A DNA stretch of 64,000 nucleotides, taken from the IMG/VR virus record IMGVR_UViG_3300025012_000028, positions 124,001 to 188,000 of that record; one strand, 5' to 3'. A program made the translations under genes and the position numbers. Numbering within the stretch: the stretch's first letter is position 1; every line of letters begins with the position of its first letter. The notes under the pieces were generated by a model. It saw only the letters and a program-made list of their open reading frames with translations, had not been told where the DNA came from and ran no database searches. Below are positions 9,754 to 43,556 of the stretch, in pieces.

Positions 9754-12106
9754 TCAACTCTCCTTGAGACGGTGATCACCATCTTTTCTCCAAAGATTTT
9801 CCGCAGTCACCTTGACAATTTGCAAAGCTTCTGGGTCTTGAGACAATAGTTCACCGAGCAACATACTTTCGGCCACCTGAGTACACAACCTACTCACATG
9901 GTTATTCAGAAAGGCATATGCAGTAAAAGTATTGTAACCCAACAAAGTTATACATGCGTTATGGAATTGAGTGAGGGTATATCGTGTCATATCCCTAAAC
10001 CTCCTTCTGGTTTCGTTTTTCCCAATCAACAAGGTATTTTTTCATGGCGCTGGCAATATCCCTCGATTTGGTTGCTGCATTATCAGAACCACCACGGATA
10101 GCTCCACCTTTACCAAGGAAGAAATAATGTGGTGTGCTACCAACATGAACTACAACCACCACATATTTGCCGGTACGAGAATCAACTACCTTCCCATCAC
10201 GACCGCCATTCTCTCTGGTGTCGGTGAGGTACATCACCATCTTTTCCTGAATTGTGAGGTTCTTATAAGCCTTTTGTTTAGCCATTGATAAGTTCCTCCA
10301 ATTTTTTATCGAGTTCCTGAATCTCTTCCATTAGACGTTCTTTATCGTATTTCAAGCTGGAAATTTTCCTTTCCTTTTCTTTCGCCAGTCTTATCGTTTT
10401 ATTTTCTTCGGATTCAATCCAATAAACAGAATATCCCATTCCATGATGCGATCTGGAATAATTGGAGGGAGGTACATTTACTACAATGGCTTTATTTCCC
10501 TGCTGCCGGATTTTCTTTGCTTCTTCCTTCACTTCTTCTTTATAGTGGGAATAATGACCAGCGAATAAATACCCCGCCTCTCTTGCTTGTTTCTCGTTCA
10601 TATCCTACCTCCAAACTGGAATTAATATCCGATATGAAAGGAGTATAACAGGATTTAAATTAATGTCAAGAATTAATTTTGACCATAAAATATTGAAACC
10701 CCGCTTCCAGAGTTCTTAAAATGATTTCATCATGATAATCGAATTCATCATATTCATAACTACATATTTCATTTTCATGAACTTTTATGGTCAGTTGCTC
10801 TGGATCTATATTTTGAATTTCTATTTCACTATTGTAATATCCATCGTTATGAAGTACATGAGTGAAACCACCACAGAATGCTTCATACTTGAGATTGGTG
10901 AAGAACTTCGTGAATTTATCGTTCCATTCTTTTTTAGTGTAAGTTTTCAACTTTATTCCCCGATATATACTTTCCAGTTGATGTTGGTTAGATTGGACAC
11001 TTCAATATTCAGATCTTTGAAAAACTTCATCTGAAGTATCGTGTGTTTTAAATTGAAAGTTTCGGACTGACAGTTTTCCCCATCGGAGAAATAGAAACCA
11101 GAAAAACCTTCGGTGTGATCCTCATGGACAGTAATCTCTGTAGACCATCTGGTATGATAATACCCACATGCGACACATTGATATCCTACTCCCATCCCAT
11201 CAAGGTCTTCAATTTCAAAATGGGTTCCCCCACACTCATTACACTTAAAAGGTTCTTTCATCATGCGCTCCCGAATCTATATGATTTAAAACAATCATAT
11301 TCTTCATCGACAATAAATCCGAGTTTTTCAAGTTCTTCTCGATCCACATCGGAAACTCTCATAGGATCAATACAAACCTGCATCACATCATGTTCACAAT
11401 GAGTAGGCCATTCAGGATTCCCATACTTCAGAAATATCTGTAATGCTTTAATTAGATCTTCCATAATTAATTTCCCCCATAAATAGAAACGTATTCTTCA
11501 CCTTCTTGCTCAAGCTTCCGAAGATTTAAAAGCAGATCTTTAAGTTTCATATCCATCCCCTATTTGAGTTGTTTAGAATTGATCCTAGAAATGATTCTAT
11601 CAATGAATTCTTCAGACTTGATATATTCATCGATGATTTTTTTACCAGTGTTTTCATGGTTTGCTAGAATATCCCACGTCTGTCTGTGGATAATATCTTT
11701 GAAAGCTTTAATTGTTTTATCATCGTGGTCGTAGTTTGGTTTGAATAATTTATCAAACAGTTCTGCAACACGTCTATCCAATATTTCAATAAATTCACAT
11801 CTTCTGAGCACATGTGACAAATTATTAATATTAACCTTATCGTCGATGCCCAACCAACTAATGAGTTTACATTTAAGCTTTTGTAACATAAAATCTTTCT
11901 CCTTAATTAGATATTAATAAACTTCCAAGAAAATGGGATGCTGTGACAAACATGAAAACTCCCACAATCCCAACAACACAAAAAACTACTTCACTCCAAT
12001 AATTATCATAGAGGTAGTACCAAACAGAAACCACACCCAAAATAATGAGAGTGATAATTAAAGCACCAACCACAATGACAGATGCACCAAGAATAAATTC
12101 TATCAT
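9754..12106 (-). CDS. run of small early hypothetical proteins (e.g. 9995-10285, 10278-10601, 10666-10950, 10953-11264, 11261-11464, 11560-11889, 11903-12106)
   Basis: Contiguous or overlapping minus-strand ORFs; 10953-11264 has CxxC...CxxC; 11903-12106 has two TM segments. Confidence 0.6.
10642..10669 (-). promoter_or_regulatory. sigma70-type early promoter
   Basis: TTGACA TTAATTTAAATCCTGT TATACT. Confidence 0.8.
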
Positions 12107-12262
12107 TTGAACCCCCTTAATTTCTCATAACAATAATACACAACTCATGCATCATATTGGCATCAATCTTGTTGTGCCTAACCCACATGTGTATGGTTTC
12201 CTTACACTCCACATAGGTCTTATCTTTCAGCCGTTCAACATAATCAGCAAGAGTTGGTTTCA

Positions 12263-13486
12263 TTAGTTCTTTCCCTCGTTGAGAATTTCTTTGTACTTGT
12301 GAGCATAAACGTTCTCGACAAAGTTGATAGTGGCATCGTTCCCTCGCTTGAGGATATGTTTGGGAACATTCACATCAGCTTCCTTGAAAGTTCTTTCCAG
12401 ACGATTGATGATACTGAACTGATCGGCATCGAAAGGATAATCACAATCACATGCCCTCACGAAATCCCAAGCATAATATTTGACACGTTTGAAAAACCTA
12501 ATCAGCTTGACAGGTTTCATTTTGGTCAGGTTGTGGATCATGTGGTTGTTCGCCACAACATTGATCAGTTTATTCTCATGCTTCGTGAACCTCATGAAGT
12601 TGAGGTACGGAGTCAGAATCTTGGCGCTCTCGTGTTCATGACCGTAGTGGTGTCGCCCGTTCCGGTAATCCTCAGACTGAGCAGTAACCGCCTTACCGAC
12701 ATCATGGAACAGAACCGCAAGGAAAACCTGATACGAGTAACCTTTCTCCGCGCAGAGGTCGATACTTTTCATTACATGCTCAAATGCCGTATCGTTGACG
12801 TGGTGGGTATGTTCCGGTCCCGCATAGAAATTGGTCAGATCAGCAAGAGGTTTAAAATGATACTTCAGTGCATCAATTTCATGAAGAAATTTGAAGAACA
12901 TAGAAGGATATTTTGAATCCTCGTATACTTTCTTCAGTTCAGCACATACCCTATCAGTAGGAATGTTTACTAGTTTTTCGACGTTCTGTTTCATAAGATC
13001 CATAGTTTCCACGTCACATTTCAAACAGAAACGAGAAATGAACCTTGCGCCTCTGTAAATGCGAAGTGGATCTTCCACAAATGCGACCGGATTTACACAA
13101 CGAAGGATTTTATTTTTAACGTCCTCCGCGCCGTTGAATGGATCTACAATTTCCCCAGACAGGTAATGTTGTGCAATGCTATTGATGGTAAAATCTCTCC
13201 TACCAAGATCAACTTCAATCTGAACACCAGAATGAACTTCAAAGTCTTGATATTTTTCACCAACACATTTTTCAGAACGAGTCAAAGCAATCTCAGATCC
13301 ATCGGTATTGAGATACACCGGAAAACAATCCCCGACCTTGTTAAGAGTAGGAAAGAACTGTTCAAATGATTCTTGAGATGCTTGGACAGTGTAATCTACA
13401 TCTTTAGGTTCAACCCCCATGATAGCATCACGGACACAACCACCAACTTTATAAAGATGAAATTTTTCAGAAATGGTATCGAGCAT
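12263..13486 (-). CDS. cca: CCA-adding tRNA nucleotidyltransferase with HD domain
   Basis: VGGCVRD, DVD, DLGRRDFTINSIA, EDPLRIYRGARF and LFHDVGK motifs; start MLDTISE after AGGAGG. Confidence 0.9.
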   Translation of the reverse strand: MLDTISEKFHLYKVGGCVRDAIMGVEPKDVDYTVQASQESFEQFFPTLNKVGDCFPVYLNTDGSEIALTRSEKCVGEKYQDFEVHSGVQIEVDLGRRDFTINSIAQHYLSGEIVDPFNGAEDVKNKILRCVNPVAFVEDPLRIYRGARFISRFCLKCDVETMDLMKQNVEKLVNIPTDRVCAELKKVYEDSKYPSMFFKFLHEIDALKYHFKPLADLTNFYAGPEHTHHVNDTAFEHVMKSIDLCAEKGYSYQVFLAVLFHDVGKAVTAQSEDYRNGRHHYGHEHESAKILTPYLNFMRFTKHENKLINVVANNHMIHNLTKMKPVKLIRFFKRVKYYAWDFVRACDCDYPFDADQFSIINRLERTFKEADVNVPKHILKRGNDATINFVENVYAHKYKEILNEGKN

Positions 13487-13521
13487 ATTCCCTCCTAAAT
13501 TGAAATTCCCAACTGCCAAAG

Positions 13522-13550
13522 ATTGTAGCACAATTGGGAATTAAAGTCAA
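13522..13550 (-). promoter_or_regulatory. sigma70-type promoter overlapped by a hairpin
   Basis: TTGACT-17-TACAAT; AATTCCCAA...TTGGGAATT inverted repeat at 13504-13542. Confidence 0.7.
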
Positions 13551-13554
13551 TAGT

Positions 13555-13854
13555 TTATTTTGAATTATTTGTCTGGATGTATTTGGCTCTGAAAAAGTAA
13601 GGGACGGAAATCACTGGATATATTTCTCTATCAAACAGATTTGTGAACACAACATAATTCAATTTGTTTTTGTTACATGGCTCACATGCAACACAGAAAT
13701 TATCCTCACCAATCCCATTTCCCAGATCAACCGGGATGATATGGTCCAAACTCGGTTTCCCGACAATTGGTTTCCGGCAATAGAGACAAATCCCATTTTG
13801 TTCTTGGAATTTCTTTTCCCTCATTTCAATTCTAAATTGGTGCGACTCCCTCAT
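13555..13854 (-). CDS. small HNH endonuclease
   Basis: CLYC...SLDHIIP...G.G.DN..ACEPCNKNK. Confidence 0.85.
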   Translation of the reverse strand: MRESHQFRIEMREKKFQEQNGICLYCRKPIVGKPSLDHIIPVDLGNGIGEDNFCVACEPCNKNKLNYVVFTNLFDREIYPVISVPYFFRAKYIQTNNSK

Positions 13855-13855
13855 T

Positions 13856-14089
13856 TTAAAAATGTCTCCATGTTATGGGTGAACCCTTATGAATTGTCAC
13901 GATCACTTTCTTCTTGACCACCATACAATAACCGCTGATATAAACGTAAGTGACCTTCTTGAGTTTTTCTTTCTGTCCTGATTTATAAAATGATTTTAAT
14001 TTATCAATCACTTTAGTATCAGAATATTTTGCCCCTGTCCGTTCACGAAATCTATCAATTACATGGCGAGACACGATTAAATCTTCCAA
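13856..14089 (-). CDS. small basic hypothetical protein (possible RelE/DUF4258-like fold)
   Basis: SRHVIDRFRER...VIVTI; TTG start after AGGAGG. Confidence 0.45.
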   Translation of the reverse strand: MEDLIVSRHVIDRFRERTGAKYSDTKVIDKLKSFYKSGQKEKLKKVTYVYISGYCMVVKKKVIVTIHKGSPITWRHF

Positions 14090-14096: not shown

Positions 14097-14149
14097 AACC
14101 CTCCTAGAAAATATGGTAGGAATATACCACCTTCTAGGAGGGAAGTCAA
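14097..14149 (-). terminator. terminator hairpin ending the late effector array, overlapping a sigma70 promoter
   Basis: CCCTCCTAGAA...TTCTAGGAGGG followed by a U-tract on the minus strand; TTGACT-17-TATATT at 14121-14149. Confidence 0.75.
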
Positions 14150-14167: not shown

Positions 14168-15220
14168 TTATTTTGTCATAAATTTTACAAAAGCTTCACC
14201 GTCTTCAGACCTATCTTCAGAAAAAGTTAACTTTTTAGGAAACATATCTCTAACATGTTGAAGTAATTCAGACATAATGCCTTGTCTTCTATATTCGGGT
14301 TTGGTATAAATATTTGCTACATGTCCTATTCCTCGTTTATTACTTAATACCTGAATTACCGCTATATGCTGTTCATTTTCATATTTTAAAAATCTATAAC
14401 TTCCATATTTATCTTTTAATACTTTAACTGTAGGTGACAAAATTTCTTCTTTTTCAACACCAACATAAGGATGTTCTTTATTTAGGAAAGAAACTAAAGT
14501 TTCATTACTTCTAATACTCTCAAATATATTATTACTTTCCCCATCAAACATTCCTCGGTTGTCCACATGCTTAATCTGGAACGGGAAAAATGCGACCCAA
14601 TGAGTTCTTCCGTTAGGATGCTTCTTAAACACTCCGTCATATCCTAAAGCTTGATATATTTTCCAATTGAATTCTTTAGGATGATCTGAATAAAAATCAT
14701 TCGCCAAAGAGAATAGACCTTTCACGATATTATCATTCTCAATAACATGAATTTCCGTTGCGGCTCTGATTACTTTTTCTTTGCCTTCCCATTCAACATC
14801 ACCATAATTGGAAAGTGCGTCTGCTAATTCGGGCGAACGTTTAATAAAGAAATTGATTTTATCATATTTCACATTTCCAATCTTATCAGCATCAAGTGGT
14901 TTCTTAATACAAAGATAGACCGGATGAACTGTAGGATTGTCAGACCCGCCTAATTTAGAACCTTTGGTGGATTCCGTCTTTCCTGTATATCCTTCCGCTT
15001 CTGTAATGTCGGTTGTAAAATAAAATCCACTACCAAGCTGATCAGCACCCTGATTAGTAAACTCATATTTAAATTCTTCTATGGCAGTTCCAGATCCATG
15101 ATAGCAAACTAATGGTTGTTTATTTTCGTCAACGACCTTGGAACCCCTAAACCATTTCCTGAACTTAGGGTTCTTGGTGACATCTAATGCTTCAGATAGA
15201 AATTGTTTAAAAGATATCAT
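14168..15220 (-). CDS. leader-tagged putative internal head protein: ART-PolyVal-like ADP-ribosyltransferase plus C-terminal GNAT
   Basis: MISFKQFLSE leader; YHGS...GSGFYFT...PVYL.IKKP...LGYDGV...VAF...QIK; GNAT motif A IYTKPEYRRQGIMSELL. Confidence 0.75.
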   Translation of the reverse strand: MISFKQFLSEALDVTKNPKFRKWFRGSKVVDENKQPLVCYHGSGTAIEEFKYEFTNQGADQLGSGFYFTTDITEAEGYTGKTESTKGSKLGGSDNPTVHPVYLCIKKPLDADKIGNVKYDKINFFIKRSPELADALSNYGDVEWEGKEKVIRAATEIHVIENDNIVKGLFSLANDFYSDHPKEFNWKIYQALGYDGVFKKHPNGRTHWVAFFPFQIKHVDNRGMFDGESNNIFESIRSNETLVSFLNKEHPYVGVEKEEILSPTVKVLKDKYGSYRFLKYENEQHIAVIQVLSNKRGIGHVANIYTKPEYRRQGIMSELLQHVRDMFPKKLTFSEDRSEDGEAFVKFMTK

Positions 15221-16287
15221 TCGAACTCTCCAAAAACATTATCGACAAGATACTTCAGCGTTTTCCAAATACCAGACGAAGTAATACTTTCAAATGCCTT
15301 TTCATCTCTATGTGGATTATTTCTCATTTCTTTGTAGCTAGTCCACACATCTTCGAAGCGTATAAAGAACTCTTGTGGGTTTTCATATACATAATTGTAT
15401 GTCGCACCAGTGAACACTCTCTGTTCCCAAACACTATTATCTTCATAGATATTGAAACTAAGTTTGACATATTTATTTCTTCTATCTTCGTTATAACTTG
15501 CGACTTTTATTTCTTTCATCTCAGGAAGTTGTTCCACTTCTTTATAATAATGCCAATCTCTATCGACATGTCTAAAAGATAAATCTAATGCCGCCTGACA
15601 TCTAGTTTCTGCCCATCGTTCCGATGACCAACCTGATGGTAATTTGTTTCTCATGTGGTTGAGTACATTGACTATTAGATCAATCTTAGGGAAATTGAAA
15701 ATTTTCAATGGAATGTTATAATGGTCACACCAAGATTCGAATACATCAAAATTCATTGGATCATCAAATTGGTTAAACACTTCCACAGCTCCACCTAAAA
15801 TTTCAGGATAAACCGCAACAGCAATTTTACTATACTTGTGTGCGGCATCATAATGTTTATCTATTATAAAATAGAATTTAATTCCTTTGTTTACGTAGGA
15901 GTTCCAGTGTGCTGGTGTGCTTTCTGTAATACACCATTTAGTTCCTGCACCATACTTGCGACTGGCCTCATGACTTCTAATATGATAAACATAAAACTCT
16001 TCATTCTCAAATATTTTGTCTGCATCTTTCGTTTTTACAATTTTTGTTTTGCGCTCAACTTCCTTATCTCTTTTCTTATCCACAAACTGATAGAATGACC
16101 AAAACCCTTTTGGTATCCAATAAGAAATATCTTTTTCACTTCCAGATAATTGATTTTTTGCTTTTAATTCTTTGAACCATTCGATATATTTATCAATATC
16201 TTTATCATTGTAATCCGGATTTCTCCAAACTCGTTTGGCATCGGCAAAGGATTCTACCAACAATATATAGGATTTGAAAGAAATCAT
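15217..16287 (-). CDS. leader-tagged putative internal head protein, PcfJ-like domain
   Basis: MISFKSYILLVE leader; EASRKYGAGTKWCIT...W.SY...FYFI motif. Confidence 0.6.
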   Translation of the reverse strand: MISFKSYILLVESFADAKRVWRNPDYNDKDIDKYIEWFKELKAKNQLSGSEKDISYWIPKGFWSFYQFVDKKRDKEVERKTKIVKTKDADKIFENEEFYVYHIRSHEASRKYGAGTKWCITESTPAHWNSYVNKGIKFYFIIDKHYDAAHKYSKIAVAVYPEILGGAVEVFNQFDDPMNFDVFESWCDHYNIPLKIFNFPKIDLIVNVLNHMRNKLPSGWSSERWAETRCQAALDLSFRHVDRDWHYYKEVEQLPEMKEIKVASYNEDRRNKYVKLSFNIYEDNSVWEQRVFTGATYNYVYENPQEFFIRFEDVWTSYKEMRNNPHRDEKAFESITSSGIWKTLKYLVDNVFGEFE

Positions 16288-16499
16288 TTTATTTCCTTGA
16301 TATTATATGAATCGGGTGTGCGCCTAAAATAACTCTCCACCGATCTTCCTAGTTTCTTTGATAACCCAAAACACATTTTCTTGAATGCTTCATCCTGACT
16401 TGCCGCTTCAGTAGACAGATAATGATTTTCTTTATGGTAGCAGAATGTTCCTTTGAATTTGGATGCTTCCGAAAGATATTGTTTAAATCTAATCATCAC
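16284..16499 (-). CDS. small leader-tagged putative internal head protein
   Basis: MMIRFKQYLSE leader; 71 aa, basic, similar in size to T4 IPI. Confidence 0.65.
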   Translation of the reverse strand: MMIRFKQYLSEASKFKGTFCYHKENHYLSTEAASQDEAFKKMCFGLSKKLGRSVESYFRRTPDSYNIKEIK

Positions 16500-17418
16500 T
16501 TCTCACCTTAGCATCTTTCCATTTGTTAGACAAGAATTCAATTACTTCTTTTGTCGATTTGAGTTTATATCGATGCATTCTCTTCACAAGCTTCTCGACA
16601 CTCATAGATTTAATTTCATCACTTTTATTATTGTGTATATCATTATTTAGAGTTGCTAAAGAGTCACCACGATAGTTATGATAAACTATTTCATATCTTA
16701 AATCATCTGCTTCTGAAGAAAGATCTTTGACTTCATCTTTATCGAATAACTCGACATAGAGATTTATTTTTTCTGGTCTACCACCCATACCACTTTTCAC
16801 TTTTTTCTTATTCAGAAGCATGAATGATTCAAAGTCTTCATAAAAATAAACTGGAATGCTATAAACGTTTGAATAATCAAGTATCTTTTTGTACATTCTA
16901 TTTCTTTCCCATGCATTGTGTTGATCATTCAGAGAAAGTTTTTCAAACGCTTTATAGTCGGAATTAATGAGAAGGTAATTCTTATCTACCATAATATGAA
17001 TTTCTTTGATATATTCATGTGCATTTTCGATTATGGATGTGGGAGAAAAGATTCTGTCCTCATTCTCTTGGTTACGCAACCGCATATCAAGAGATACACT
17101 CGGTCTTCTGAAAGATGGCCCCCAATAATCTACACTCTTACCGGAAAGATTATGAGAAAGTTTCGTACCATCCAACACAAGATTGACCTGTTCGGAATTA
17201 CCAAAGCTTCTAGCATAACCACCATATTTAATTCTACTGGTAGAAAAATAAAATGGTTTAAACTTTTTCCCTTTGTACATCTGATCTGAAGCAGTTCCTA
17301 AATCAGATGCTAATCTAAACTTATCATCTTTAAGAATTGATACTAGTTTATGAACACCAGTATGATGATAGAGAATGGGTGATACACCTTCTATAAGAAA
17401 CTCTTTGAAAGATATCAT
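16489..17418 (-). CDS. leader-tagged putative internal head protein, ART-fold candidate
   Basis: MISFKEFLIE leader; LYHHT...IL, FSTSR and ENEDR (H / STS / ExE arrangement). Confidence 0.55.
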   Translation of the reverse strand: MISFKEFLIEGVSPILYHHTGVHKLVSILKDDKFRLASDLGTASDQMYKGKKFKPFYFSTSRIKYGGYARSFGNSEQVNLVLDGTKLSHNLSGKSVDYWGPSFRRPSVSLDMRLRNQENEDRIFSPTSIIENAHEYIKEIHIMVDKNYLLINSDYKAFEKLSLNDQHNAWERNRMYKKILDYSNVYSIPVYFYEDFESFMLLNKKKVKSGMGGRPEKINLYVELFDKDEVKDLSSEADDLRYEIVYHNYRGDSLATLNNDIHNNKSDEIKSMSVEKLVKRMHRYKLKSTKEVIEFLSNKWKDAKVRSDD

Positions 17419-17693
17419 TTTGGGATGTCCTGTACTTTTATTATTTTTGTAATTTTAGCATATTTTGGATGTACATAATCCAACCTATCAAATAAAACAT
17501 GAGCACGTTTAAGTGTCATTACTTCTGGTTCATCTGTTATATGAATATCATAACCACCCCAACCTATAAATTGTTTAATCCCTTTACGTTTTCCTACATA
17601 AATTACATATTCTTCTCTACCACTATTTCCAATTTTAGTGAGATAATCATCTAATGCTTTATCTTCCTTTATGAATTCTTTAAATGAAATCAT
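17415..17693 (-). CDS. small leader-tagged putative internal head protein
   Basis: MISFKEFIKE leader; ATGA overlaps at both ends. Confidence 0.7.
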   Translation of the reverse strand: MISFKEFIKEDKALDDYLTKIGNSGREEYVIYVGKRKGIKQFIGWGGYDIHITDEPEVMTLKRAHVLFDRLDYVHPKYAKITKIIKVQDIPK

Positions 17694-18508
17694 TTTTTCT
17701 TCCTTATCTTAACTAAAGAATCATCAAACAGAACATAATTCAATTCATTACTACTATCCCCAAAGTATTTAGTTCCGGCGATACCAATAGAAGCAAAATA
17801 CAAAGATGCTTCTTTGGCTGAACCAAATATATGTTTAGCTAGTCCATATATTTGTTCACCACTCTGGTTCCAAAATCTATATGATTCATTTTTTAAAACA
17901 TCATTCAGTGGGATTGACTTTACTTCATCCCCCATATCTTGAAGAATTCCTTTAGGATGAGCCTTCTCAAATAAAGGAATGAGTTTCTTTTTTATTGGTT
18001 CGCTCTGTTCTTTGAGAGATTTATTCCAATGAAGAAATTCATCTTCTGAAGGAATGATATCTACATGATACAATTTACCTTTTGACTTCTTAACTTCTCT
18101 TTGTTGATTGATATTCTGTGCTATTTCATCCATCTTTTTATAATAACCCAAACCATTATCTTTAGTCCACTCTTCTCCATTCAGAGCATCATTCAACATA
18201 CCAGATATAAACTTCTTTGCTTTTTTCAGACCCATAGTATAAATTAAATCTGCTGCTTTTTGTTCAGGTGTTCCAGCTTTAGTTTTAATTCCATTTATTT
18301 CGTAGAACCAAGGAACCGGAGCATCACCAACCTTTTTACCTATATACCATTCAGCAACTTCCTTCTTAGAACTGAAATATAAACCCCACCCATATGCAGC
18401 AGCACCCTCACCACTACCGATATGTTGAAGTTTGAACTCATCAAAATCGTAGGGTGATCCATGATAAGCAATCGGAGATTCAATTAAAAACTTTTTGAAT
18501 GATATCAC
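17690..18508 (-). CDS. leader-tagged putative internal head protein, ART-PolyVal-like domain
   Basis: GTG start MISFKKFLIE; AYHGSP.DFDEF...GSGEGAAAYGWGLYFS...Y, GKLY.V, GIAG.KY and NYVLFDD motifs. Confidence 0.75.
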   Translation of the reverse strand: MISFKKFLIESPIAYHGSPYDFDEFKLQHIGSGEGAAAYGWGLYFSSKKEVAEWYIGKKVGDAPVPWFYEINGIKTKAGTPEQKAADLIYTMGLKKAKKFISGMLNDALNGEEWTKDNGLGYYKKMDEIAQNINQQREVKKSKGKLYHVDIIPSEDEFLHWNKSLKEQSEPIKKKLIPLFEKAHPKGILQDMGDEVKSIPLNDVLKNESYRFWNQSGEQIYGLAKHIFGSAKEASLYFASIGIAGTKYFGDSSNELNYVLFDDSLVKIRKKK

Positions 18509-20090
18509 TCACCCTCCCCATCTGTTTTCCACTGCATAACATCTTTAAAGATAAGATATTCATTATCACTGAACCACCCACTTCTCAACCTAAGATGTTT
18601 GACCTCATTGGCGATTGTGGTTTCAACTGGTTCTTGGTGATATTTATCCTTATCCCCTCCTACAAAACCTTTCTTTTTGAACTTGGTGTTGTCGTGGTAA
18701 ATTTTATCTAAAAGCGCCAACATCTGCTCTGCGCCCTGTGAATATTTTTTCTCGTGCTCATGTCCTTCCCAAGATGCTTTCTCGTCCTCTAGGTAATCCT
18801 CAAGCGTTTTACCGGCATTTGTTTTCATCTGTACATATGACGCTTCAATATATGCTCGATACCACTCTTGATCTGAAAGAGGTTCCCATTTAACCCCATA
18901 AATTTCGGCAAGAGTTGTGATATCAGATTCATAAGATTTGATCAGTTTGATATTATCTAATTTTCTTTTTTCATGTCTTGCGTCTACTTCTTTCGATTCC
19001 ATCTCTTTACGAGAAAATTCAGGAACAAAATCGGTTCTGTCCTTCAGAGTTTTCCAATCTTCACCAATCTCTTTGGCTATATCAATAAATTTAGTTTCGG
19101 CATCCCACGAAAAGTTATAAGGTTCCTTCTCCGAATAGATGTTAACTCTGATTCTATGGTGATCATACTTTTTAGAATATTTGTGGGGCTTCTCACCCAG
19201 ATTAAGATTATCCATATAGGATTGAGGGAAAGAAAATTCTGTATCAATCCTTCTACCTTTCTTAGTCCATGACTTTTCTTTGCTAAATTCTTTGATTTTA
19301 TCTCCAATCTGCATGGCGATCATAGCCGCAAGCTTCCTATGTAACTTAGCTTCATCTTTTGATGTTCCTAAACCACCAGCAGAAAGATATTCGGATTTGG
19401 GATTTAGTTCATAAATGTCTACGATCTTGAAGAACTTCTTATTGAAGAACACGGCTTGCCACGGTTCCCTATCATTGATGATTGCCGACTTTTGGTTTCT
19501 GGCTTCATCAATAAGTCCATCATAGCCCAAGGATTTCCAGAACTGCATTTGTTCTTCGCCAGTTTTTAATTCAGGTTTCACATCATCAAAATATCTATTC
19601 TTCTGAAAATAGAATTCTTCTGGATTTGAAACCTGTGACATTTTAAATAAAGCTTGTTTGTCGTTACATTTATATCTTTTTTAGCTGCTTTGAGATAGTA
19701 ATCATTCAATCCCAACGCTCTAAGAATCCTATCCATGATATGATTCTGCATGGTCTGAAGGTGGAGAATGTTAGGTGAACCAACTAACTCAATAACTCTG
19801 AGGAATCTAGCTCCACGACCATACCAAACGTCTGCGGGATGCTGGCATAAATAAGATAAAGGATAAAGGTAAATTCCTTCTGGGTCTGAGTGGGAGGAGT
19901 CTCGTTGGTGTGGTGATGAAAAATTCTTATTTAAAATATCGGTGTCGGGATTCATTGTAAAATTACACCAATATTGATTTTCAGATGATGTTTTTAATAT
20001 TTTATTCCATTTTTTATAAAATAAATGGAATTGCTTGGGATAGATATCATGAAAATGAATCTCAGTTAAAAAGCTTTTGAAAGAAATCAT
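18505..20090 (-). pseudogene. leader-tagged ART-like gene split by a -1 frameshift (ORFs 19578-20090 and 18505-19641)
   Basis: Leader MISFKSFLTE and PEGIYLYP lie in the 5' ORF; LGYDGLID...EPWQAVFFN lies in the 3' ORF; the second frame opens exactly at the A6 run 19677-19682. Confidence 0.7.
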
Positions 20091-20115
20091 TATTATGCCT
20101 CTGTGTGTTTAAAAT

Positions 20116-20123
20116 TATTTATA
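20116..20123 (-). promoter_or_regulatory. T4-type late promoter TATAAATA
   Basis: Exact consensus about 25 nt upstream of the MISFK start at 20090. Confidence 0.75.
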
Positions 20124-20149
20124 AAATCTATATTGAGGATAAACCAATC

Positions 20150-21079
20150 ATGAAAGATAAAACATATTATATCATTTACGAAACTACAAATTTATTAAAT
20201 GGTAAAAAATATAGGGGAGCGCATAAAACTAAAAATATAAATGATGGGTATATGGGGAGTGGTGTGATAATTAATCAAGCAATTTTGAAATATGGAAAAG
20301 AAAATTTTGAAACAATTCATTTAGCATATGCGTTATCATATGATGATCTTTTTTGGTTAGAAGAATATGTTTTCGTGACTAAAGAATGGGTTGATTTGCC
20401 ACATTCTTATAATTTAAGAGTGGGTGGATGTGGCAAATATTACGAAGAACAAACTAAACAAACATGTTTAGACAAATATGGGGTTGAATTCTATTCCCAA
20501 ACTGAAGAATGTAAACTTAAGAAAATTAACACATGTTTAGAAAAATATGGAGTTGAATTCTATGTTCAAACCGAAGATTTTAAGTTGATAATGAAAAATA
20601 AATACAGCGAAGATAACCCACATCCCTTAACTGGCAGGCCAGTTTTACCAGAAACAAAAGAAAAACTCAGAATCGCAAATTTAGGAAAAGTCACGTCAGA
20701 AGAAACCAAAGCAAAAATAAGCGTAAAATCTTCTGGTAAAAACAACCCTAATTATGGTATTAAACATACAAATGAGACTAAAGAAAAATGTAGCAAAGTA
20801 AATCAAAAATATGAATATAAACTAATTTCACCTAATGGTGAAATTTTCACAACTTTATCATTATTTAATTTTTGTGCCGCAAATGAACTGGATAGAAATG
20901 CATTTAGAAATATTCTTAGGGTTGGTAGAACGACCGTAGAATGTCCCAAAAATGTTACACAATGTAGTAAGTTAAGATTTAATACTACTGGATGGTCGAT
21001 AGAAGAAATGGAGATTATCCCAACTTCACCCAAAGCAAAGTATCCAAGAGAGAAATCATCAATTCCACTCCGTTGGTAA
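20150..21079 (+). mobile_element. GIY-YIG (Seg-like) homing endonuclease with NUMOD3 repeats
   Basis: YIIYETTNLLNGKKYRGAH...DGYMGSG...AILKYGKENF...E...YNL.VGG; ETKEKL / ETKAKIS / G.NNPNYG repeats; likely ATG at 20150 after GAGG. Confidence 0.85.
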
Positions 21080-21652
21080 ATTCCAAACTTCTATTTTATC
21101 TTTTGGTTTAACTACTTTCGAATTGGTGATCAGTTTCATATTGAATAGAACAACCATTCTTTCTCCCCACCCAAATGCGTTATCAACAATTGAATAGTCC
21201 ACACCATGTTGCACTAAGAACCGTCTCAAATTGTTACTGTCGGATGGTTTGATTGCTTCATAGTTGACCATTATGTTTATGAAGATGACTGCGCTAATTC
21301 TATCTTTGTAATTATATTTTGATGCTGCCACTAAAACTTCTTTCCGTTTAGATTTGATACAGTAATATTTCACAAAATCATCGATGGCATGAAAAGGAAT
21401 TGAGGCTTCTTTAGCATCCACACCCTTTTGAATTGTGACAAGATATAACTTCCTACTTCCCTTTTTATATTTCTCTACCACATTATATGAAGTAGTCAGA
21501 TATAAACCGGGAGCAAATTGGAATCTACCTTTCTTCTGAATATAATTTTCATCGGGACCATAATCTAAATTGCCCCCATGCCAGAAAGAAAGAGTATTGG
21601 GTTCTGTAGATGGGGAAATGAGATCTTCGAAGATGGTTTTATATGATATCAT
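21059..21652 (-). CDS. leader-tagged putative internal head protein, ART-like domain
   Basis: MISYKTIFE leader; FWHGG...GRFQFAPGLYLTT...KLYLV...GVDYSIV...VVLFN. Confidence 0.65.
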   Translation of the reverse strand: MISYKTIFEDLISPSTEPNTLSFWHGGNLDYGPDENYIQKKGRFQFAPGLYLTTSYNVVEKYKKGSRKLYLVTIQKGVDAKEASIPFHAIDDFVKYYCIKSKRKEVLVAASKYNYKDRISAVIFINIMVNYEAIKPSDSNNLRRFLVQHGVDYSIVDNAFGWGERMVVLFNMKLITNSKVVKPKDKIEVWNLPTEWN

Positions 21653-22236
21653 TCGGTTTCCTCGTTACAAAACTTTACCCAATCTTCAACACTGTTCAAA
21701 TGTTCTTTAAGCTCATATAAATCATTTATCACAAAAACCCATTGTCGCATACCGATACAATAACAGAGATGTCTACAGAGATATTGTGCTCTATTATAAC
21801 TATCAAGAGCCATATGAGATTTACCATAATCTTTGAGTCTCTGATATAATGCACGTCTGAAATCATTTTCAGTGGGATATTTTTCTAAGAACTTCTCTCT
21901 GTTCTCACTCCTGTTGATTCTATAATCATAATTATTGGAAATGTTTTCTTCCATCTCACGTTCAAACCCATAACTGTCCGTGAGATACTTCAGAACTTTA
22001 TTGACTTTATCCTTACAATATTCATAACCATGTGTATCCCACATGATTCTTTGAAATGCTCGGTTAATAATATCCCCTGCGTGTTCGACTACTGGATTAA
22101 GGACACCACCACCCATCAACATCTGAACCTTTAACATTAAATCTTCGGGTTCACCACGTTGATCTAAAGCTATCTGTATGCTTTTGGCTTTAAAAGAATC
22201 ATCTGATTCAGACAAATATTCCCTAAAAGAAATCAC
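21649..22236 (-). CDS. leader-tagged putative internal head protein, unknown helical domain
   Basis: GTG start MISFREYLSE; 4-nt overlaps on both sides. Confidence 0.7.
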   Translation of the reverse strand: MISFREYLSESDDSFKAKSIQIALDQRGEPEDLMLKVQMLMGGGVLNPVVEHAGDIINRAFQRIMWDTHGYEYCKDKVNKVLKYLTDSYGFEREMEENISNNYDYRINRSENREKFLEKYPTENDFRRALYQRLKDYGKSHMALDSYNRAQYLCRHLCYCIGMRQWVFVINDLYELKEHLNSVEDWVKFCNEETE

Positions 22237-22913
22237 GCTGCCTCCAAATAACCCGGTTTAGTATACTTAGCCAGAGCCGGATTCTGATCATCTACAATAA
22301 TTTCATCTAATACATTCAATTCGTCTGGATCGTGCCACGGATCGATACACACTATCATACCATCAGAAGGACGCTCCATGAAATTCCCAACGTGAATATC
22401 CAGCCTACCGAATTCTCTTCCCTCTTCCATCTTTAACATTGCGTTTCTGAGACTCGGACCTTGAGGAAACATATCTTTATTCTTCTCTGCTCTTCTACCA
22501 ACCCGACCCACGAACCATTCATCCTGTACATCCATAATTACTTGATCAACGAATGTCTCATTACCTTCCGACATAGGTTCAAGCTTTTCTAATTTGACCA
22601 ACTTAATCAATTCGTCTTTACGGGAACGTCTATGGAAAGCAGGAATGGTTTTCATTCGCCCCAACACTCTAGGAAAATGGGGATTGTTTCTGTTCTCGGA
22701 TTTGAGAATATATCTAAGGAAGGATTCATAAGACTGATCTAAAGTCCAAACCTTGATCACATAGTTCTTACTTGGTATTTCAAAAACCTGTGAGTGAGCA
22801 CCACTACCCACTTCTCTCCACTTAAGTTTCTTGAAAAGATTTTTGAGGGAATTGGCACCATAGAATTTCTTCACATTGTATAACTCTAATAAAAATTGTT
22901 TGAAAGAAATCAT
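22233..22913 (-). CDS. leader-tagged protein-kinase-like enzyme
   Basis: MISFKQFLLE leader; VGSGAHSQVF glycine loop, VIK lysine, LEKL, DIHVGNFM catalytic loop, CIDP metal-binding motif. Confidence 0.8.
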   Translation of the reverse strand: MISFKQFLLELYNVKKFYGANSLKNLFKKLKWREVGSGAHSQVFEIPSKNYVIKVWTLDQSYESFLRYILKSENRNNPHFPRVLGRMKTIPAFHRRSRKDELIKLVKLEKLEPMSEGNETFVDQVIMDVQDEWFVGRVGRRAEKNKDMFPQGPSLRNAMLKMEEGREFGRLDIHVGNFMERPSDGMIVCIDPWHDPDELNVLDEIIVDDQNPALAKYTKPGYLEAA

Positions 22914-22940: not shown

Positions 22941-22948
22941 TATTTATA
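22941..22948 (-). promoter_or_regulatory. T4-type late promoter TATAAATA
   Basis: Exact consensus about 27 nt upstream of the first array gene. Confidence 0.8.
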
Positions 22949-40892: not shown

Positions 40893-42629
40893 TTAATTAA
40901 CCATATACCCAAATCCAGATTCATCTTTTAAAAAGTTCCTTGCGTCCAATTGTTCCCAACCGTCGAACCCGTAGTACGGCTGACTCGTTTTTATTTCAAA
41001 TCCAATTCCATTTTCCAATTCAAAATCGGAATCAGTTAATAACAACATCACAGTTTTGAAATTCGTATATACTTTCATTGGTGCCTGATTCCATTTATTA
41101 TCTACATCATTAATAAATGCCTCATCTTCTAGGTCGTTATATGTTTCCCCTCCAATTGTTATATCAAAACTTTTCAGCCCACCGTCTAAAGCAGACATCA
41201 TTTCGTTATATCTGCCACCTTCAATACCTCTCTCCGCTGCCCATCTACATTGAGTATAAAGATCATCTCCCTCATCTTCCAAAAACTGGAACATATCATC
41301 TTCCCAATTTTCTTCATCCTCGTCCGGATATTCTTTTCTAATATACTCTTCAACTTTCTTTTCGTCCAACATTTCATAACATTCTCTTATAGTATCATCA
41401 CTCACTTCTATATCTGGGTCCGAATCTTGGTCTACTATCCATTTGGTTGTATCGTCACCATAATTTTCAACTAGGTCTTCTAAATCTCTGGCTTCATATA
41501 TGACTGCAAATTCTTTCTTTTCATCCCACTCTAAAGAATGAAGATCTTTCGAAATCCAGAGTTCATTCATTCTCTGCATAAATGAATCGGTTTTTCCTAC
41601 TTTCTTATAATAATCCATCAAACCCATCAACTCGGGTCGTTGTTCAAATAAATCTTCTTTAAATTCATCTGACAAATCTTCGGTACTAAAATCCGAATCT
41701 TGTCCATAAGAGGAACGTTCTATCCCTTTGATATAATAACTTTCGGTTCCCTTGGTTGATGTTACTTCTTTATGGAGCAGCAAATCCAGAATGTACTTGT
41801 GGTACTTCTCAACGGGTTTGGTATTTTGTTTGCCCTTCATTTGATATAAGATATGATCATCACTACCCATCTCAAAAGTCAGATGGGGTTCCCATAACCA
41901 CGTAGACGGTTCAGATTTGCGTTTGTTGAGGTATCGGAGGGAAAGTAAGGTACTACCATGACTTCCAGTTCCGCAGTGTCCCATTGCCCTACTCTCGTTG
42001 CTACAGTAGTTGGTGTTGAGGTCTACCCAATACCAACCGTTCCCATACTCGATTATAGGAAAACATCTTTTGTCTGGATAACCTTCTTCATGATCCAATG
42101 GTTGTTTGATATACTGAACTGTTCCATCTAACTCTGATGCCCATTCCTTTTCAATCTTTTCCATATCGGCAAACACTTCTTCGGGGAATTTACCGGTAGG
42201 ATTATAATCATCAATCTCTTTTAAGTGAAGATCCAGAAAGTGTTTATATTGAGTCAATGTTTTTCTAGGTAGAAAATCATTTTGCATTTTACTATCTAAT
42301 ATGTCGGGTCTATCCGCCAGATTAAATTTTTTACATTCGCTTTGTAAAAGTTTTTTGTAATATTGTTTTATGTTCTGTTCAGCAACTTTATCATCTAGAG
42401 TTAAATTGTCTAGTGTCCATGCCATATATATCTGCATTAATTTATTATACCAAATAATTCTAAAATTCTTTTTTAAATACTCTGGCGATTGAAGAACATA
42501 AGATCTATAATATGTGTCGATTACCGGAGTAACTTTACCCAATTCCAAAACTTTGGTAAACATCTGCGAATAATCATATGCCTCAAGCAGCAGAGGAGCA
42601 TGTAAAAAGGTTTTAAAAGAAATCATCAT
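40893..42629 (-). CDS. leader-tagged putative internal head protein, PcfJ-like domain plus acidic C-terminus
   Basis: MMISFKTFLHAPLLLE leader; ESRAMGHCG...LLSLR...PHLTFE...QMKGKQN.KP..KY motif. Confidence 0.7.
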   Translation of the reverse strand: MMISFKTFLHAPLLLEAYDYSQMFTKVLELGKVTPVIDTYYRSYVLQSPEYLKKNFRIIWYNKLMQIYMAWTLDNLTLDDKVAEQNIKQYYKKLLQSECKKFNLADRPDILDSKMQNDFLPRKTLTQYKHFLDLHLKEIDDYNPTGKFPEEVFADMEKIEKEWASELDGTVQYIKQPLDHEEGYPDKRCFPIIEYGNGWYWVDLNTNYCSNESRAMGHCGTGSHGSTLLSLRYLNKRKSEPSTWLWEPHLTFEMGSDDHILYQMKGKQNTKPVEKYHKYILDLLLHKEVTSTKGTESYYIKGIERSSYGQDSDFSTEDLSDEFKEDLFEQRPELMGLMDYYKKVGKTDSFMQRMNELWISKDLHSLEWDEKKEFAVIYEARDLEDLVENYGDDTTKWIVDQDSDPDIEVSDDTIRECYEMLDEKKVEEYIRKEYPDEDEENWEDDMFQFLEDEGDDLYTQCRWAAERGIEGGRYNEMMSALDGGLKSFDITIGGETYNDLEDEAFINDVDNKWNQAPMKVYTNFKTVMLLLTDSDFELENGIGFEIKTSQPYYGFDGWEQLDARNFLKDESGFGYMVN

Positions 42630-43010
42630 TTACCTCAACGTCCCAAGTTTAATAAAATCACCCGAATCTAACAGTTCGTGTACTCCGGTTCCATATTTCA
42701 TCCCAGAATGTTTAACTGCATATTGACTTCCAGATTCCTCTTCACCTATAGTTTTTGTAAGATACATAGGGGAATCAAATTTAATATTCCAACTATAACC
42801 AGTCACCTGATAAACTTTACCAGTCTTATTTGATTTGAATCTATCACCCACTCCCAAGCGCCATCCTTGGTATGCCTCAATCTTTTCCATCATGTCTTTC
42901 ACACCAAGCTTAATATCATCCCTCAATTTCTTATGAAACTCCCTTTCGGGTCTGGTGATAAGAGGAATGGGTTCTTTATCTTCGGTGATAAATTCTTTGA
43001 ATGAAATCAT
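42630..43010 (-). CDS. leader-tagged putative internal head protein
   Basis: MISFKEFITE leader. Confidence 0.7.
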   Translation of the reverse strand: MISFKEFITEDKEPIPLITRPEREFHKKLRDDIKLGVKDMMEKIEAYQGWRLGVGDRFKSNKTGKVYQVTGYSWNIKFDSPMYLTKTIGEEESGSQYAVKHSGMKYGTGVHELLDSGDFIKLGTLR

Positions 43011-43036
43011 GGAGTTATCCTATATGAATTTTTTAT

Positions 43037-43065
43037 TTGACAATTACGGATTTCGGAGTTAAAAT
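43037..43065 (+). promoter_or_regulatory. antisense sigma70 promoter
   Basis: TTGACA-17-TAAAAT on the plus strand, with no plus-strand ORF downstream. Confidence 0.6.
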
Positions 43066-43124
43066 AATCTTGTCCGTTAGGACATAGACATCTACTGCCT
43101 TTTATTATAGGACAATGGACAATC

Positions 43125-43556
43125 CTAGAAATCATCATCTTCATCGGGAGGAATGACTTCTACAACATCATATTTCTCACCAATATATTTATTTGAATAT
43201 AAAAAGTCCTTCATATCTTCTACATCGACCCAACCTAATTTAAGATTGGTGGAAGTCAGAGTTATAATGCAGCTATACTTTTTAAATTTCTTCATTTCTC
43301 CAACAAAGTTAATTTCCAAACACAGAGGTTTTTCTAATTCAAATTTCCGCGCAACATCTGTATGTAGAATGGTATCCCCGAAACCATAAACAATTTCACC
43401 ATCCACAACAACTACTCTCATGATATCCCAACTCTTAACAACCTCTATGGATTTGATTTCATCAAAGGTGGGATTTTCGAATATAAGTTGTTCCTCACGC
43501 TTATACATGTAGGAATCTTTATAATTTTCGGATAAAAATTTTTTGAATGATATCAA
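43125..43556 (-). CDS. leader-tagged putative internal head protein
   Basis: TTG start MISFKKFLSE. Confidence 0.65.
   Translation of the reverse strand: MISFKKFLSENYKDSYMYKREEQLIFENPTFDEIKSIEVVKSWDIMRVVVVDGEIVYGFGDTILHTDVARKFELEKPLCLEINFVGEMKKFKKYSCIITLTSTNLKLGWVDVEDMKDFLYSNKYIGEKYDVVEVIPPDEDDDF

What the first reader, a model, noticed from the sequence alone, without database searches (positions are those of the whole stretch)
15217..22236. The leader's first codons double as the upstream gene's stop codon, giving a self-punctuating cassette design
Seen: seven junctions are 4-nt (A/G)TGA overlaps (15217-20, 16284-87, 17415-18, 17690-93, 18505-08, 21649-52, 22233-36). The conserved Met-Ile start (RTG ATH) itself supplies the TGA that ends the previous gene. 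Inference: the ~30-nt leader serves as packaging tag, translational coupler and short homology block, so cargo genes could be gained, lost or swapped by leader-to-leader recombination without breaking the operon. This recalls the polymorphic T-even IPI locus, here with larger enzymatic cargo.
Basis: partly seen in the sequence, partly recalled or inferred. Interest (0 to 1): 0.8.

Follow-up and report, generated by a model that had tools for sequence, protein, structure and literature searches.

The report
Leader-tagged phage effector gene array
A distant T4-like giant phage carries two late operons of ten genes that all begin with the same ten-residue T4-type capsid-targeting leader, and because that leader starts RTG-AT it also supplies the stop codon of the gene in front. 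This is a compact variant of the known T4 internal-protein system, not a new kind of element.

Summary
All seven listed junctions are RTGA overlaps. An eighth junction (16489-16496) ends the upstream gene in a TAG made by leader codons 2-3.

The leader M-I-S-F-K-x-F-L-x-E matches the T4 capsid-targeting sequence (MKTYQEFIAE, MKTFKEF) at the positions known to matter: 4, 7, 8 and 10. Both operon heads carry the T4 late-promoter motif TATAAATA. The cargo includes at least three ADP-ribosyltransferase-fold proteins, a GNAT domain and a kinase-like protein. The best reading is head-packaged, injected host-takeover proteins.

The "self-punctuating" overlap is mostly ordinary compaction:
- 18-21% of other junctions also overlap by 4 nt.
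- Among genes that start NTGA, leader genes overlap only slightly more often (43% vs 37%, p=0.21; window alone 7/10 vs 11/37, p=0.03).

Leader-to-leader recombination is not shown in this phage. Near-identical strains have the same gene order, and the leaders share at most 16 nt of exact identity. Other T4-like metagenomic contigs do show it: one clean cassette indel with its crossover in the leader, other mosaic boundaries at leaders, and copy-number variation in arrays.

Verdict: a new variant of a known kind, moderately interesting.

The parts
22941..22948 (-). TATAAATA, T4-type late-promoter-like motif 27 nt upstream of the first leader gene (head of operon 1)
22233..22913 (-). Leader gene 1 (226 aa, MISFKQFLLE). 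The cargo is protein-kinase-like (phrog_15752, T7 gp0.7-type host-shutoff kinase, E=4e-6).
21649..22236 (-). Leader gene 2 (195 aa, GTG start, MISFREYLSE), cargo unknown. Its GTGA overlaps the stop of gene 1.
21059..21652 (-). Leader gene 3 (197 aa, MISYKTIFE). The cargo is ART-PolyVal-like and AcrIF11-like ADP-ribosyltransferase fold. ATGA overlap with gene 2. Last gene of operon 1.
20105..21079 (+). Opposite-strand GIY-YIG/NUMOD3 homing-endonuclease-like ORF that splits the cluster into two operons. Its 3' end overlaps the 3' end of gene 3 by 21 nt.
20116..20123 (-). TATAAATA late-promoter-like motif 25 nt upstream of leader gene 4 (head of operon 2)
18505..20090 (-). Leader gene 4 (MISFKSFLTE). 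In this window it is split into a 170-aa ORF (19578-20090) and a 358-aa ORF (18505-19581) by an A6 run at 19677-19682. A near-identical contig (L126) has A7 and one intact 528-aa gene. There is a weak lead to an ART-PolyVal fold.
17690..18508 (-). Leader gene 5 (272 aa, GTG start, MISFKKFLIE), cargo ART-PolyVal ADP-ribosyltransferase. GTGA overlap.
17415..17693 (-). Leader gene 6 (92 aa, MISFKEFIKE), cargo unknown. ATGA overlap.
16489..17418 (-). Leader gene 7 (309 aa, MISFKEFLIE). The cargo is DarT/PARP/Arr-like by language-model features, which is a lead only. ATGA overlap at its start. Its own stop is the TAG inside the next leader.
16284..16496 (-). Leader gene 8 (70 aa, MIRFKQYLSE). Its codons 2-3 (ATT AGA) create the TAG that ends gene 7, an 8-nt overlap.
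15217..16287 (-). Leader gene 9 (356 aa, MISFKSYILLVE). The cargo belongs to a widespread phage family with the motif ASCKYGAGTKWCI, whose members mostly carry leader-like N-termini. ATGA overlap.
14168..15220 (-). Leader gene 10 (350 aa, MISFKQFLSE), cargo ART-PolyVal plus a GNAT acetyltransferase domain. ATGA overlap. Last gene of operon 2.
14115..14131 (-). Terminator-like hairpin plus T-rich tail just after the last leader gene
40893..43556 (-). Second group of three leader genes next to tail-fibre-like genes: 43125-43556 (TTG start, LISFKKFLSE), 42630-43010 (MISFKEFITE) and 40893-42626 (MISFKTFLHAPLLLE). Their junctions do not overlap: a 3-nt gap, a 114-nt spacer, and TAA directly followed by ATG.

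Best explanation
The window is part of a 214.5-kb metagenomic contig (IMGVR_UViG_3300025012_000028) from a distant member of the T4 superfamily. Positions 14168-22913 hold two late-transcribed minus-strand operons, 22913 to 21059 and 20090 to 14168. They are separated by an opposite-strand homing-endonuclease-like gene.

The two operons encode ten proteins. Each begins with a 9-15-residue propeptide, M-I-S-F-K-x-F-L-x-E. I read this as a variant of the T4 capsid-targeting sequence. Inferred steps:
1. The aromatic residues at positions 4 and 7 dock the protein onto the scaffolding core of the prohead.
2. A gp21-type prohead protease cuts after the (L/I)-x-E.
3. The mature cargo stays in the head and is ejected with the DNA.

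The cargo includes several ADP-ribosyltransferase-fold proteins, a GNAT domain and a kinase-like protein. These are host-takeover or anti-defence activities that benefit from arriving ready-made, as T4 Alt and IPI-III do.

Because the peptide fixes the first bases as RTG-AT(H), every leader carries a TGA in the +1 frame. Tightly packed upstream genes end there in 7 of 8 internal junctions, and the eighth ends in a TAG within the leader. Each start has its own SD in the upstream gene's tail, so the arrangement permits coupled translation.

Shown: the overlaps, the peptide conservation with varying synonymous sites, the match to the T4 CTS, the late-promoter motifs, the cargo domains and the T4-like affinity.

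Inferred: packaging, cleavage, ejection and coupling.

The overlap is best seen as ordinary operon compaction made easy by the leader. A useful by-product is that cassette boundaries coincide with leader starts, so duplication, loss or exchange at leaders leaves all frames and stops intact.
For: Leader and junctions. Conservation is at the peptide level: 67% nt identity in the first 30 nt against 27% in the next 30, with varying synonymous sites and codon identity of 0.59 against 0.43 expected.

T4 leaders read from NC_000866 are ipII/ipIII MKTYQEFIAE and ipI MKTFKEF. In T4, residues 4 and 7 govern targeting and residues 8 and 10 govern processing (PMC9026906). MKTF/MKSF-type and MISF-type leaders occur together in the same contigs.

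Late promoters: TATAAATA lies 25-27 nt upstream of both operon heads and 30-32 nt upstream of two large ORFs in the tail-fibre-like region. In other contigs it precedes 21/142 leader genes against 30/1790 other ORFs (p=6e-12).

T4 affinity:
- Gp44 clamp loader with Gp44_lid, and weak gp45 and gp32 hits.
- The best gp44 relatives are a pelagimyophage, Pseudomonas phage pf16 and T4-like cyanophages.
- 58 of about 120 leader-bearing loci carry gp41, uvsX, gp43 or gp61 homologues or homologues of neighbouring P-HM2 cyanophage genes.

Cargo: ART-PolyVal twice, plus GNAT and a kinase-like protein. A third ART-PolyVal-like protein scores 0.95 with TM 0.79. Across 104 leader proteins from other contigs the cargo includes Acb1, ADPrib_exo_Tox, RNA ligase, polynucleotide kinase and zeta-toxin-like kinases.

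The leader is portable. The same 400-aa family carries it in metagenomic contigs and lacks it in cyanophage P-HM2.

SD motifs.
Against: - No virion proteome, N-terminal mapping or transcript data exist for this phage.
- The prohead protease, scaffold and late sigma factor were not seen. They would lie outside the 64-kb window.
- Some leader-tagged cargo in other contigs are metabolic-looking enzymes (cytidylyltransferase, deoxyribonucleotidase), which are not obvious head cargo.
- TATAAATA is only modestly enriched in the window as a whole: 16 sites against 7.3 expected, with 1 of 100 shuffles reaching 16.
- The three leader genes at 40893-43556 do not overlap their upstream genes.
- Overlap use is not significantly above that of other NTGA-start genes.
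Confidence: 0.65

Rival explanations
1. Ordinary compaction only. The RTGA overlaps are the commonest overlap type in dense phage operons and have no role beyond saving space and allowing coupling. The leader plays no part in recombination.
For: - 4-nt overlaps occur at 18-21% of non-leader junctions.
- Among genes starting NTGA the rates are 37% for non-leader and 43% for leader genes, p=0.21.
- Leaders in the window share only microhomology.
- Twenty near-identical contigs show the same gene order.
- Five indels between related contigs lie at non-leader boundaries.
Against: - In the window all 8 internal junctions end the upstream ORF within the first 8 nt of the leader, and 7/10 against 11/37 gives p=0.03.
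- L040 and L088 differ by exactly one cassette, with the crossover in the leader.
- The leader is the best conserved 30-nt block among tandem paralogues: 0.77 against about 0.5.
Confidence: 0.35
2. The array grew mainly by tandem duplication and divergence of a leader-plus-ART gene in place, not by import or swapping of foreign cassettes. The shared leader and the shared junction type are then inherited together. This does not exclude the best explanation.
For: - Three to five of the ten cargo proteins have an ADP-ribosyltransferase-like fold.
- Related arrays in other contigs hold 1-4 tandem copies of family A and 1-3 of family B, with 4-nt overlaps.
Against: - The kinase-like, GNAT, 356-aa, 195-aa, 92-aa and 70-aa cargo show no relation to the ARTs.
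- The same cargo family occurs with and without the leader in different phages.
- The 356-aa family has different neighbours in relative L135.

Leader fusion to unrelated genes must therefore also occur.
Confidence: 0.4
3. The leader is not a capsid-targeting signal. It is some other N-terminal tag, such as a translation-enhancing A/U-rich start region, a degron, or a handle for a phage chaperone.
For: - A/U-rich wobble choices at codons 2, 3 and 5.
- Metabolic-type cargo in other contigs.
- No direct packaging evidence.
Against: - Amino acids are conserved while synonymous sites vary.
- The leader matches the T4 CTS position by position, including the protease site.
- T4-type MKTF leaders occur in the same contigs.
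- Leader genes are strongly associated with the late-promoter motif.
Confidence: 0.12

Closest known systems
T-even internal protein loci (IPI, IPII, IPIII and more than 30 variants) with the capsid-targeting sequence
   Same: - A 10-residue N-terminal leader with the same key positions.
- Otherwise unrelated mature proteins.
- Hyperplastic, polymorphic loci.
- Proposed anti-defence roles. Ip1-3 all inhibit GmrSD enzymes (PMC12373910; PMC3012670; PMC2839356).
   Different: - T4 IP genes are small, basic, non-enzymatic proteins. Each has its own promoter, RBS and intergenic spacer.
- Here there are ten genes of up to 528 aa in two overlapping operons, with enzyme-like cargo and no intergenic DNA.
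- T4 ipII and ipIII leaders are identical at DNA level for about 32 nt. Here exact runs reach at most 16 nt.
T4 Alt, the packaged ADP-ribosyltransferase
   Same: An ADP-ribosyltransferase that is made late, carries a gp21-cleaved propeptide, is packaged at about 40 copies and is injected to modify host RNA polymerase (PMC5694885, and my own knowledge of T4).
   Different: The cargo here is of the ART-PolyVal type and occurs in several copies, one of them fused to GNAT. No sequence similarity to Alt was tested.
PeSL cassettes and IP-locus flanking repeats (Arbiol 2010, Comeau 2014, Repoila 1994)
   Same: Short repeated elements at gene boundaries serve as recombination sites that shuffle non-essential ORFs in T4-like hyperplastic regions (PMC2839356, PMC4122927).
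   Different: PeSLs are intergenic elements of about 100 bp made of a promoter and a stem-loop. Here the only repeated element is the coding leader itself, and there are no intergenic promoters or terminators.
Polyvalent proteins of phages and conjugative elements (Iyer et al. 2017, from my own knowledge)
   Same: They share the ART-PolyVal domain and the idea of effectors delivered together with the DNA.
   Different: Polyvalent proteins are single giant multidomain polypeptides. Here each effector is a separate ORF with its own targeting leader.
Ejection or inner-body proteins of giant phages (phiKZ, SPN3US)
   Same: Many head-internal proteins are processed by a T4-related prohead protease.
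   Different: Those propeptides are mostly longer than 100 residues and the cleavage motif differs (PMC5694885). Here the leaders are T4-like short ones.

Membership tests
T4-type CTS-tagged internal (ejected) head proteins | N-terminal leader of about 10 residues with targeting determinants at positions 4 (aromatic) and 7 (Phe) | tested here: met
   12 of 13 window leaders have F/Y at position 4 and F/Y at position 7. The exception is MISYKTIFE, with Y4 and I7. T4 has Y4/F4 and F7. The roles of these positions come from PMC9026906.
T4-type CTS-tagged internal (ejected) head proteins | gp21-type processing site (L/I)-x-E at the end of the leader | tested here: met
   All 13 leaders have [LI]-x-E ending between residue 9 and 15. 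Ten of them have it at residues 8-10.
T4-type CTS-tagged internal (ejected) head proteins | Mature parts share nothing but the leader | tested here: met
   All-against-all BLASTP of the cargo gives only one weak pair, the two ART-PolyVal proteins at E=3e-5. Fold-level leads suggest 3-5 distant ART paralogues.
T4-type CTS-tagged internal (ejected) head proteins | The genome encodes a gp21-type prohead protease and a scaffolding core | not tested
   The head genes are not in the 64-kb window and the rest of the contig could not be fetched in full. T4-superfamily affinity is supported by gp44, gp45-like and gp32-like genes. gp21 is a core gene of that superfamily (PMC9026906).
T4-type CTS-tagged internal (ejected) head proteins | Synthesis at the time of head assembly (late promoter) | tested here: met
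   TATAAATA lies 25-27 nt upstream of both operon heads. The motif is enriched before leader genes in other contigs. This is a consensus match only, not transcript data.
T4-type CTS-tagged internal (ejected) head proteins | Physical presence in virions, removal of the leader, and ejection into the host | not testable with these tools
   Needs virion proteomics or an infection assay.
PeSL-type or IP-locus intergenic shuffling cassettes | Repeated intergenic promoter plus stem-loop elements flanking each ORF | tested here: not met
   The junctions overlap, so there is no intergenic DNA. Promoter-like and terminator-like sites are not above the shuffle expectation (51 against 41.7±6.6, and 4 against 5.1).
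Polyvalent proteins | Many effector domains fused in one very large polypeptide | tested here: not met
   There are ten separate ORFs of 70-528 aa, each with its own start and leader. Only the ART-PolyVal domain is shared.

The most novel reading that the evidence does not exclude
In a large branch of environmental T4-like phages, the 30-nt sequence that encodes the capsid-targeting peptide is itself the recombination site of an integrase-free, integron-like cassette system. Arrays of injected effectors would then expand, contract and exchange by leader-to-leader crossover. Because the leader also carries the stop for the gene in front, every recombinant stays correctly terminated and translationally coupled. 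If so, the leader is also a sequence handle for finding injected anti-defence proteins in metagenomes.
Probability: 0.25. Interest if true: 0.75.

Novelty: new variant of a known kind. Interest (0 to 1): 0.55.

Why it matters
If the MISFK leader is a working capsid-targeting signal, a simple sequence motif marks proteins that phages inject ahead of gene expression. The tagged cargo includes Acb1, several ADP-ribosyltransferase families, kinases, RNA repair enzymes and many unknowns. That would give a direct route to new host-takeover and anti-defence effectors.

It would also show that T4's small IP system has, in other branches, grown into operons of enzymes. In those operons the coding leader doubles as punctuation and possibly as a shuffling site.

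Tried and rejected
- Megablast of the cluster against 50,697 phage records: no match.
The proposed test for reads joining two leaders, and read laying, could therefore not be run.
- The search for related loci with the two flanking genes found only the window's own contig and one 39% relative without leaders.
- Contexts of CCA-enzyme relatives: L131 and L136 have no leader genes, and P0018's contig had no DNA available. L135 has four leader genes, but it is too diverged (47%) to map breakpoints.
- The Dickeya phage JA13 hit that seemed to align from residue 1 has no leader. The similarity lies upstream of the annotated start.
- The first 50 kb of Pseudomonas phage pf16, a close gp44 relative, has no leader genes. 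The rest was not fetched.
- Repoila et al. 1994 (PMC395341) is not held. Its content is cited through later papers.
- A literature search for 'MISFK' found nothing relevant.
- Gene conversion among the window's leaders was considered and set aside. Synonymous sites differ, and codon identity is only modestly above expectation.
- The A6 run was considered as a programmed frameshift site and left open. A -1 shift there would reproduce the 528-aa protein exactly, but an assembly error or a real polymorphism is simpler.

Full report
**1. What is there**

The window is positions 124001-188000 of IMGVR_UViG_3300025012_000028, a 214,553-nt viral contig. It has no near match among 50,697 deposited phage genomes.

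Between 14168 and 22913 the minus strand carries ten genes whose products all start M-I-S-F-K-x-F-L-x-E or a close variant. Three more such genes lie at 40893-43556 beside tail-fibre-like genes.

One of the ten genes is split in this window into 170-aa and 358-aa ORFs by an A6 run at 19677-19682. A near-identical groundwater contig (L126) has A7 and an intact 528-aa gene. An opposite-strand GIY-YIG/NUMOD3 homing-endonuclease-like ORF (20105-21079) divides the cluster into two operons.

**2. The observation**

All seven reported junctions are RTGA overlaps, five ATGA and two GTGA. The eighth internal junction (16489-16496, ATGATTAG) also ends the upstream gene inside the leader. Its stop is a TAG created by codons 2-3 of an atypical MIRFK leader. 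So all 8 internal junctions take their stop from the first 8 nt of the next leader.

The two genes without an upstream partner (starts at 22913 and 20090) each sit 25-27 nt downstream of TATAAATA. A terminator-like hairpin follows the last gene. The three leader genes in the second group do not overlap their upstream genes.

**3. Is it more than chance?**

| Comparison | Leader junctions | Other junctions | p |
|---|---|---|---|
| Window, all co-directional junctions | 7/10 | 11/60 | 0.002 |
| About 120 other viral contigs | 46/126 | 170/822 | 1.5e-4 |
| All loci, genes starting NTGA only | 53/123 (43%) | 181/491 (37%) | 0.21 |
| Window, genes starting NTGA only | 7/10 | 11/37 | 0.03 |

These genomes overlap genes often. 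Once the comparison is limited to genes whose start already reads NTGA, most of the excess disappears. The leader therefore raises the overlap frequency mainly by always providing the TGA: 90% of leader starts are NTGA against 56% of other starts.

Ile2 is part of the peptide motif. It is kept where nothing overlaps. In related leaders it is replaced by Lys, as in T4, which still gives TGA, or by Leu, which gives no TGA.

**4. What the leader is**

Conservation is at the peptide level:
- The first 30 nt are 67% identical among the 13 leaders, against 27% for the next 30 nt.
- Synonymous positions vary (ATT/ATA, TCT/TCA, TTC/TTT).
- In-register exact runs are mostly 5-9 nt, with a maximum of 16.
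- Codon identity is 0.59 against 0.43 expected from codon usage.

T4's own leaders, read from NC_000866, are MKTYQEFIAE (ipII, ipIII) and MKTFKEF... (ipI). In T4 the first 10 residues suffice for packaging. Residues 4 and 7 govern targeting, and residues 8 and 10 govern cleavage by the prohead protease (PMC9026906). The window's leaders have F/Y at 4, F/Y at 7 in twelve of thirteen, and L/I at 8 with E at 10 in ten of thirteen. All 13 have (L/I)-x-E by residue 15.

In other contigs MKTF/MKSF-type and MISF-type leaders occur side by side.

The phage is T4-like:
- It has a Gp44 clamp loader, with weak gp45 and gp32 hits.
- Its best gp44 relatives are pelagimyophage Mosig, Pseudomonas phage pf16 and T4-like cyanophages.

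**5. Independent support for packaging**

On the coding strand, 6 of the 7 TATAAATA sites lie 24-32 nt upstream of the start of an ORF of at least 127 aa. These include both leader operons and the 629-aa and 1575-aa ORFs of the tail-fibre-like region. None of the nine sites on the other strand has a convincing such relation. TATAAATA is the T4 late-promoter consensus (my own knowledge).

In about 120 other contigs the motif lies within 60 nt upstream of 21/142 leader genes against 30/1790 other ORFs (p=6e-12). Genes for early-acting activities that are transcribed late are what one expects of injected proteins such as T4 Alt.

**6. Cargo**

| Gene | Cargo | Support |
|---|---|---|
| 14168-15220 | ART-PolyVal plus GNAT | Pfam |
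| 17690-18508 | ART-PolyVal | Pfam |
| 21059-21652 | ART-PolyVal/AcrIF11-like | score 0.95, TM 0.79 |
| 16489-17418 | DarT/PARP-like | score 0.90, lead only |
| 528-aa gene (18505-20090) | ART-PolyVal | score 0.87, lead only |
| 22233-22913 | T7 gp0.7-type kinase family | E=4e-6 |
| 15217-16287 | widespread phage family, mostly with leader-like N-termini | homologue search |

At BLASTP level the cargo proteins are unrelated, apart from the two ART-PolyVal proteins.

**7. The leader is widespread and portable**

It sits on very diverse ORFs. Of those loci, 58 hold gp41, uvsX, gp43 or gp61 homologues or homologues of neighbouring P-HM2 cyanophage genes.

A census of 104 non-redundant leader proteins found DUF6267, DUF6321, zeta-toxin/AAA_33 kinases, amidoligase, Acb1, ADPrib_exo_Tox, RNA ligase, GNAT, cytidylyltransferase and polynucleotide kinase. 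One 400-aa family carries the leader in metagenomic contigs and lacks it in cyanophage P-HM2, where the protein starts at the residue that follows the leader elsewhere.

**8. Recombination at leaders**

In this phage there is no evidence either way. Twenty contigs carrying the identical flanking gene show the same gene order, and two of them (L125, L126) match the cluster base for base apart from the A6/A7 indel. A 47% relative (L135) has four leader genes upstream of the same CCA enzyme, and only one cargo family is shared. This shows plasticity but not breakpoints.

Pairs of closely related contigs elsewhere are more informative:
- L040 and L088 differ by exactly one 512-nt cassette. The upstream flank continues into one leader and the downstream sequence follows from the next leader. 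The upstream gene ends in the leader's TGA in both forms.
- L056 and L077 have a cassette replacement bounded by gene and leader starts. They also have a chimeric gene whose left breakpoint is the 3' edge of the leader.
- L010 and L084 have a deletion that starts exactly at a leader start.
- Homologous arrays behind a conserved flank hold 1-4 copies of family A and 1-3 of family B, in differing order.
- Among four tandem paralogues the leader is the best conserved 30-nt block, 0.77 against about 0.5.
- Against this, five other indels in the same set lie at ordinary gene boundaries, and some are homing-endonuclease-like insertions. The sample is also centred on leader genes.

**9. Comparison with what is known**

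T-even IP loci are the direct precedent. They have a conserved leader, unrelated mature proteins and polymorphic loci with more than 30 variants. Shuffling through conserved flanking blocks has been proposed for them (PMC3012670; PMC2839356; PMC4122927), and Ip1-3 are all GmrSD inhibitors (PMC12373910). T4 recombines readily at 6-10-bp microhomologies (PMC9391042), so leader runs of up to 16 nt are not too short in principle.

What differs here:
- The genes form operons with overlapping junctions and no intergenic repeats.
- The cargo is large and enzyme-like, dominated by ART folds.
- The leader variant is MISFK.
- The scale is 13 genes in 64 kb.

**10. Verdict**

The packaging-tag reading is well supported by analogy. 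Translational coupling is plausible but ordinary. The "self-punctuating" stop is real, but it is mostly a consequence of a fixed NTGA start in a compact genome. Leader-mediated cassette exchange is undemonstrated in this phage and has some comparative support elsewhere. This is a new variant of a known kind.

Noticed in passing
window 19677-19682 (minus strand A6); L126:3396-4982: A homopolymer difference, A6 in the window and L125 against A7 in L126, splits a 528-aa leader gene into 170 + 358 aa. A -1 shift on the A run would restore exactly the L126 protein. This could be an assembly error, a real polymorphism or slippage.
   Followed up: partly
window 20105-21079 (+): A GIY-YIG/NUMOD3 homing-endonuclease-like ORF lies on the opposite strand inside the cluster. 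It converges on and overlaps gene 21059-21652 by 21 nt. The late-promoter motif of the second operon lies within its 5' end. Such genes promote exchange of flanking markers in T4.
   Followed up: partly
window 44001-46000, within ORF 43770-46772: A GC-rich stretch (52% against about 36% elsewhere) inside a 1000-aa tail-fibre-like ORF with an EPS-depolymerase-type PHROG hit. It may be a recently acquired receptor-binding or depolymerase module.
   Followed up: no
window 1-13900: Downstream of the cluster lies a group of RNA and nucleotide genes: a CCA-adding enzyme (12263-13531), an RlaP-type nucleotidyltransferase (8458-9579), HD-domain proteins, an AAA_33 kinase, DUF2786/DUF7168 and DUF932. 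An HNH ORF sits at 13555-13854.
   Followed up: no
L127, L128, L129 (ENA groundwater contigs): Three independent assemblies of the same phage break at or just beyond the 3' end of the leader cluster. This could reflect strain variation there, or chance.
   Followed up: no
L077:4961, 11258, 12204; L056:11565; L033:5352; L047:3394: T4-style MKTF/MKSF/MKTY leaders, such as MKTFQEFINE, occur in the same metagenomic contigs as MISFK leaders. This links the two leader variants.
   Followed up: partly
L133 (Prochlorococcus phage P-HM2) 8986-10206: The cyanophage homologue of a 400-aa family starts MSKNTHLEHLED with no leader, whereas metagenomic homologues read MISFKEFLKEDKNTHMEHLED. The leader is a clean N-terminal add-on.
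   Followed up: yes
context of P0018 (no DNA held): A 42% CCA-enzyme relative has a reverse transcriptase (RVT_1) next to a Gad2-family gene and a Prok-E2_D gene. This is a defence-like module on a phage-like contig.
   Followed up: no
window 25590-26435 and 37600-38298: Two further ORFs that may be mobile endonucleases. The 281-aa ORF has an H-N-H-like N-terminus and repeated NUMOD-like motifs. The 232-aa ORF has a DUF559 domain. The window appears rich in such genes.
   Followed up: no
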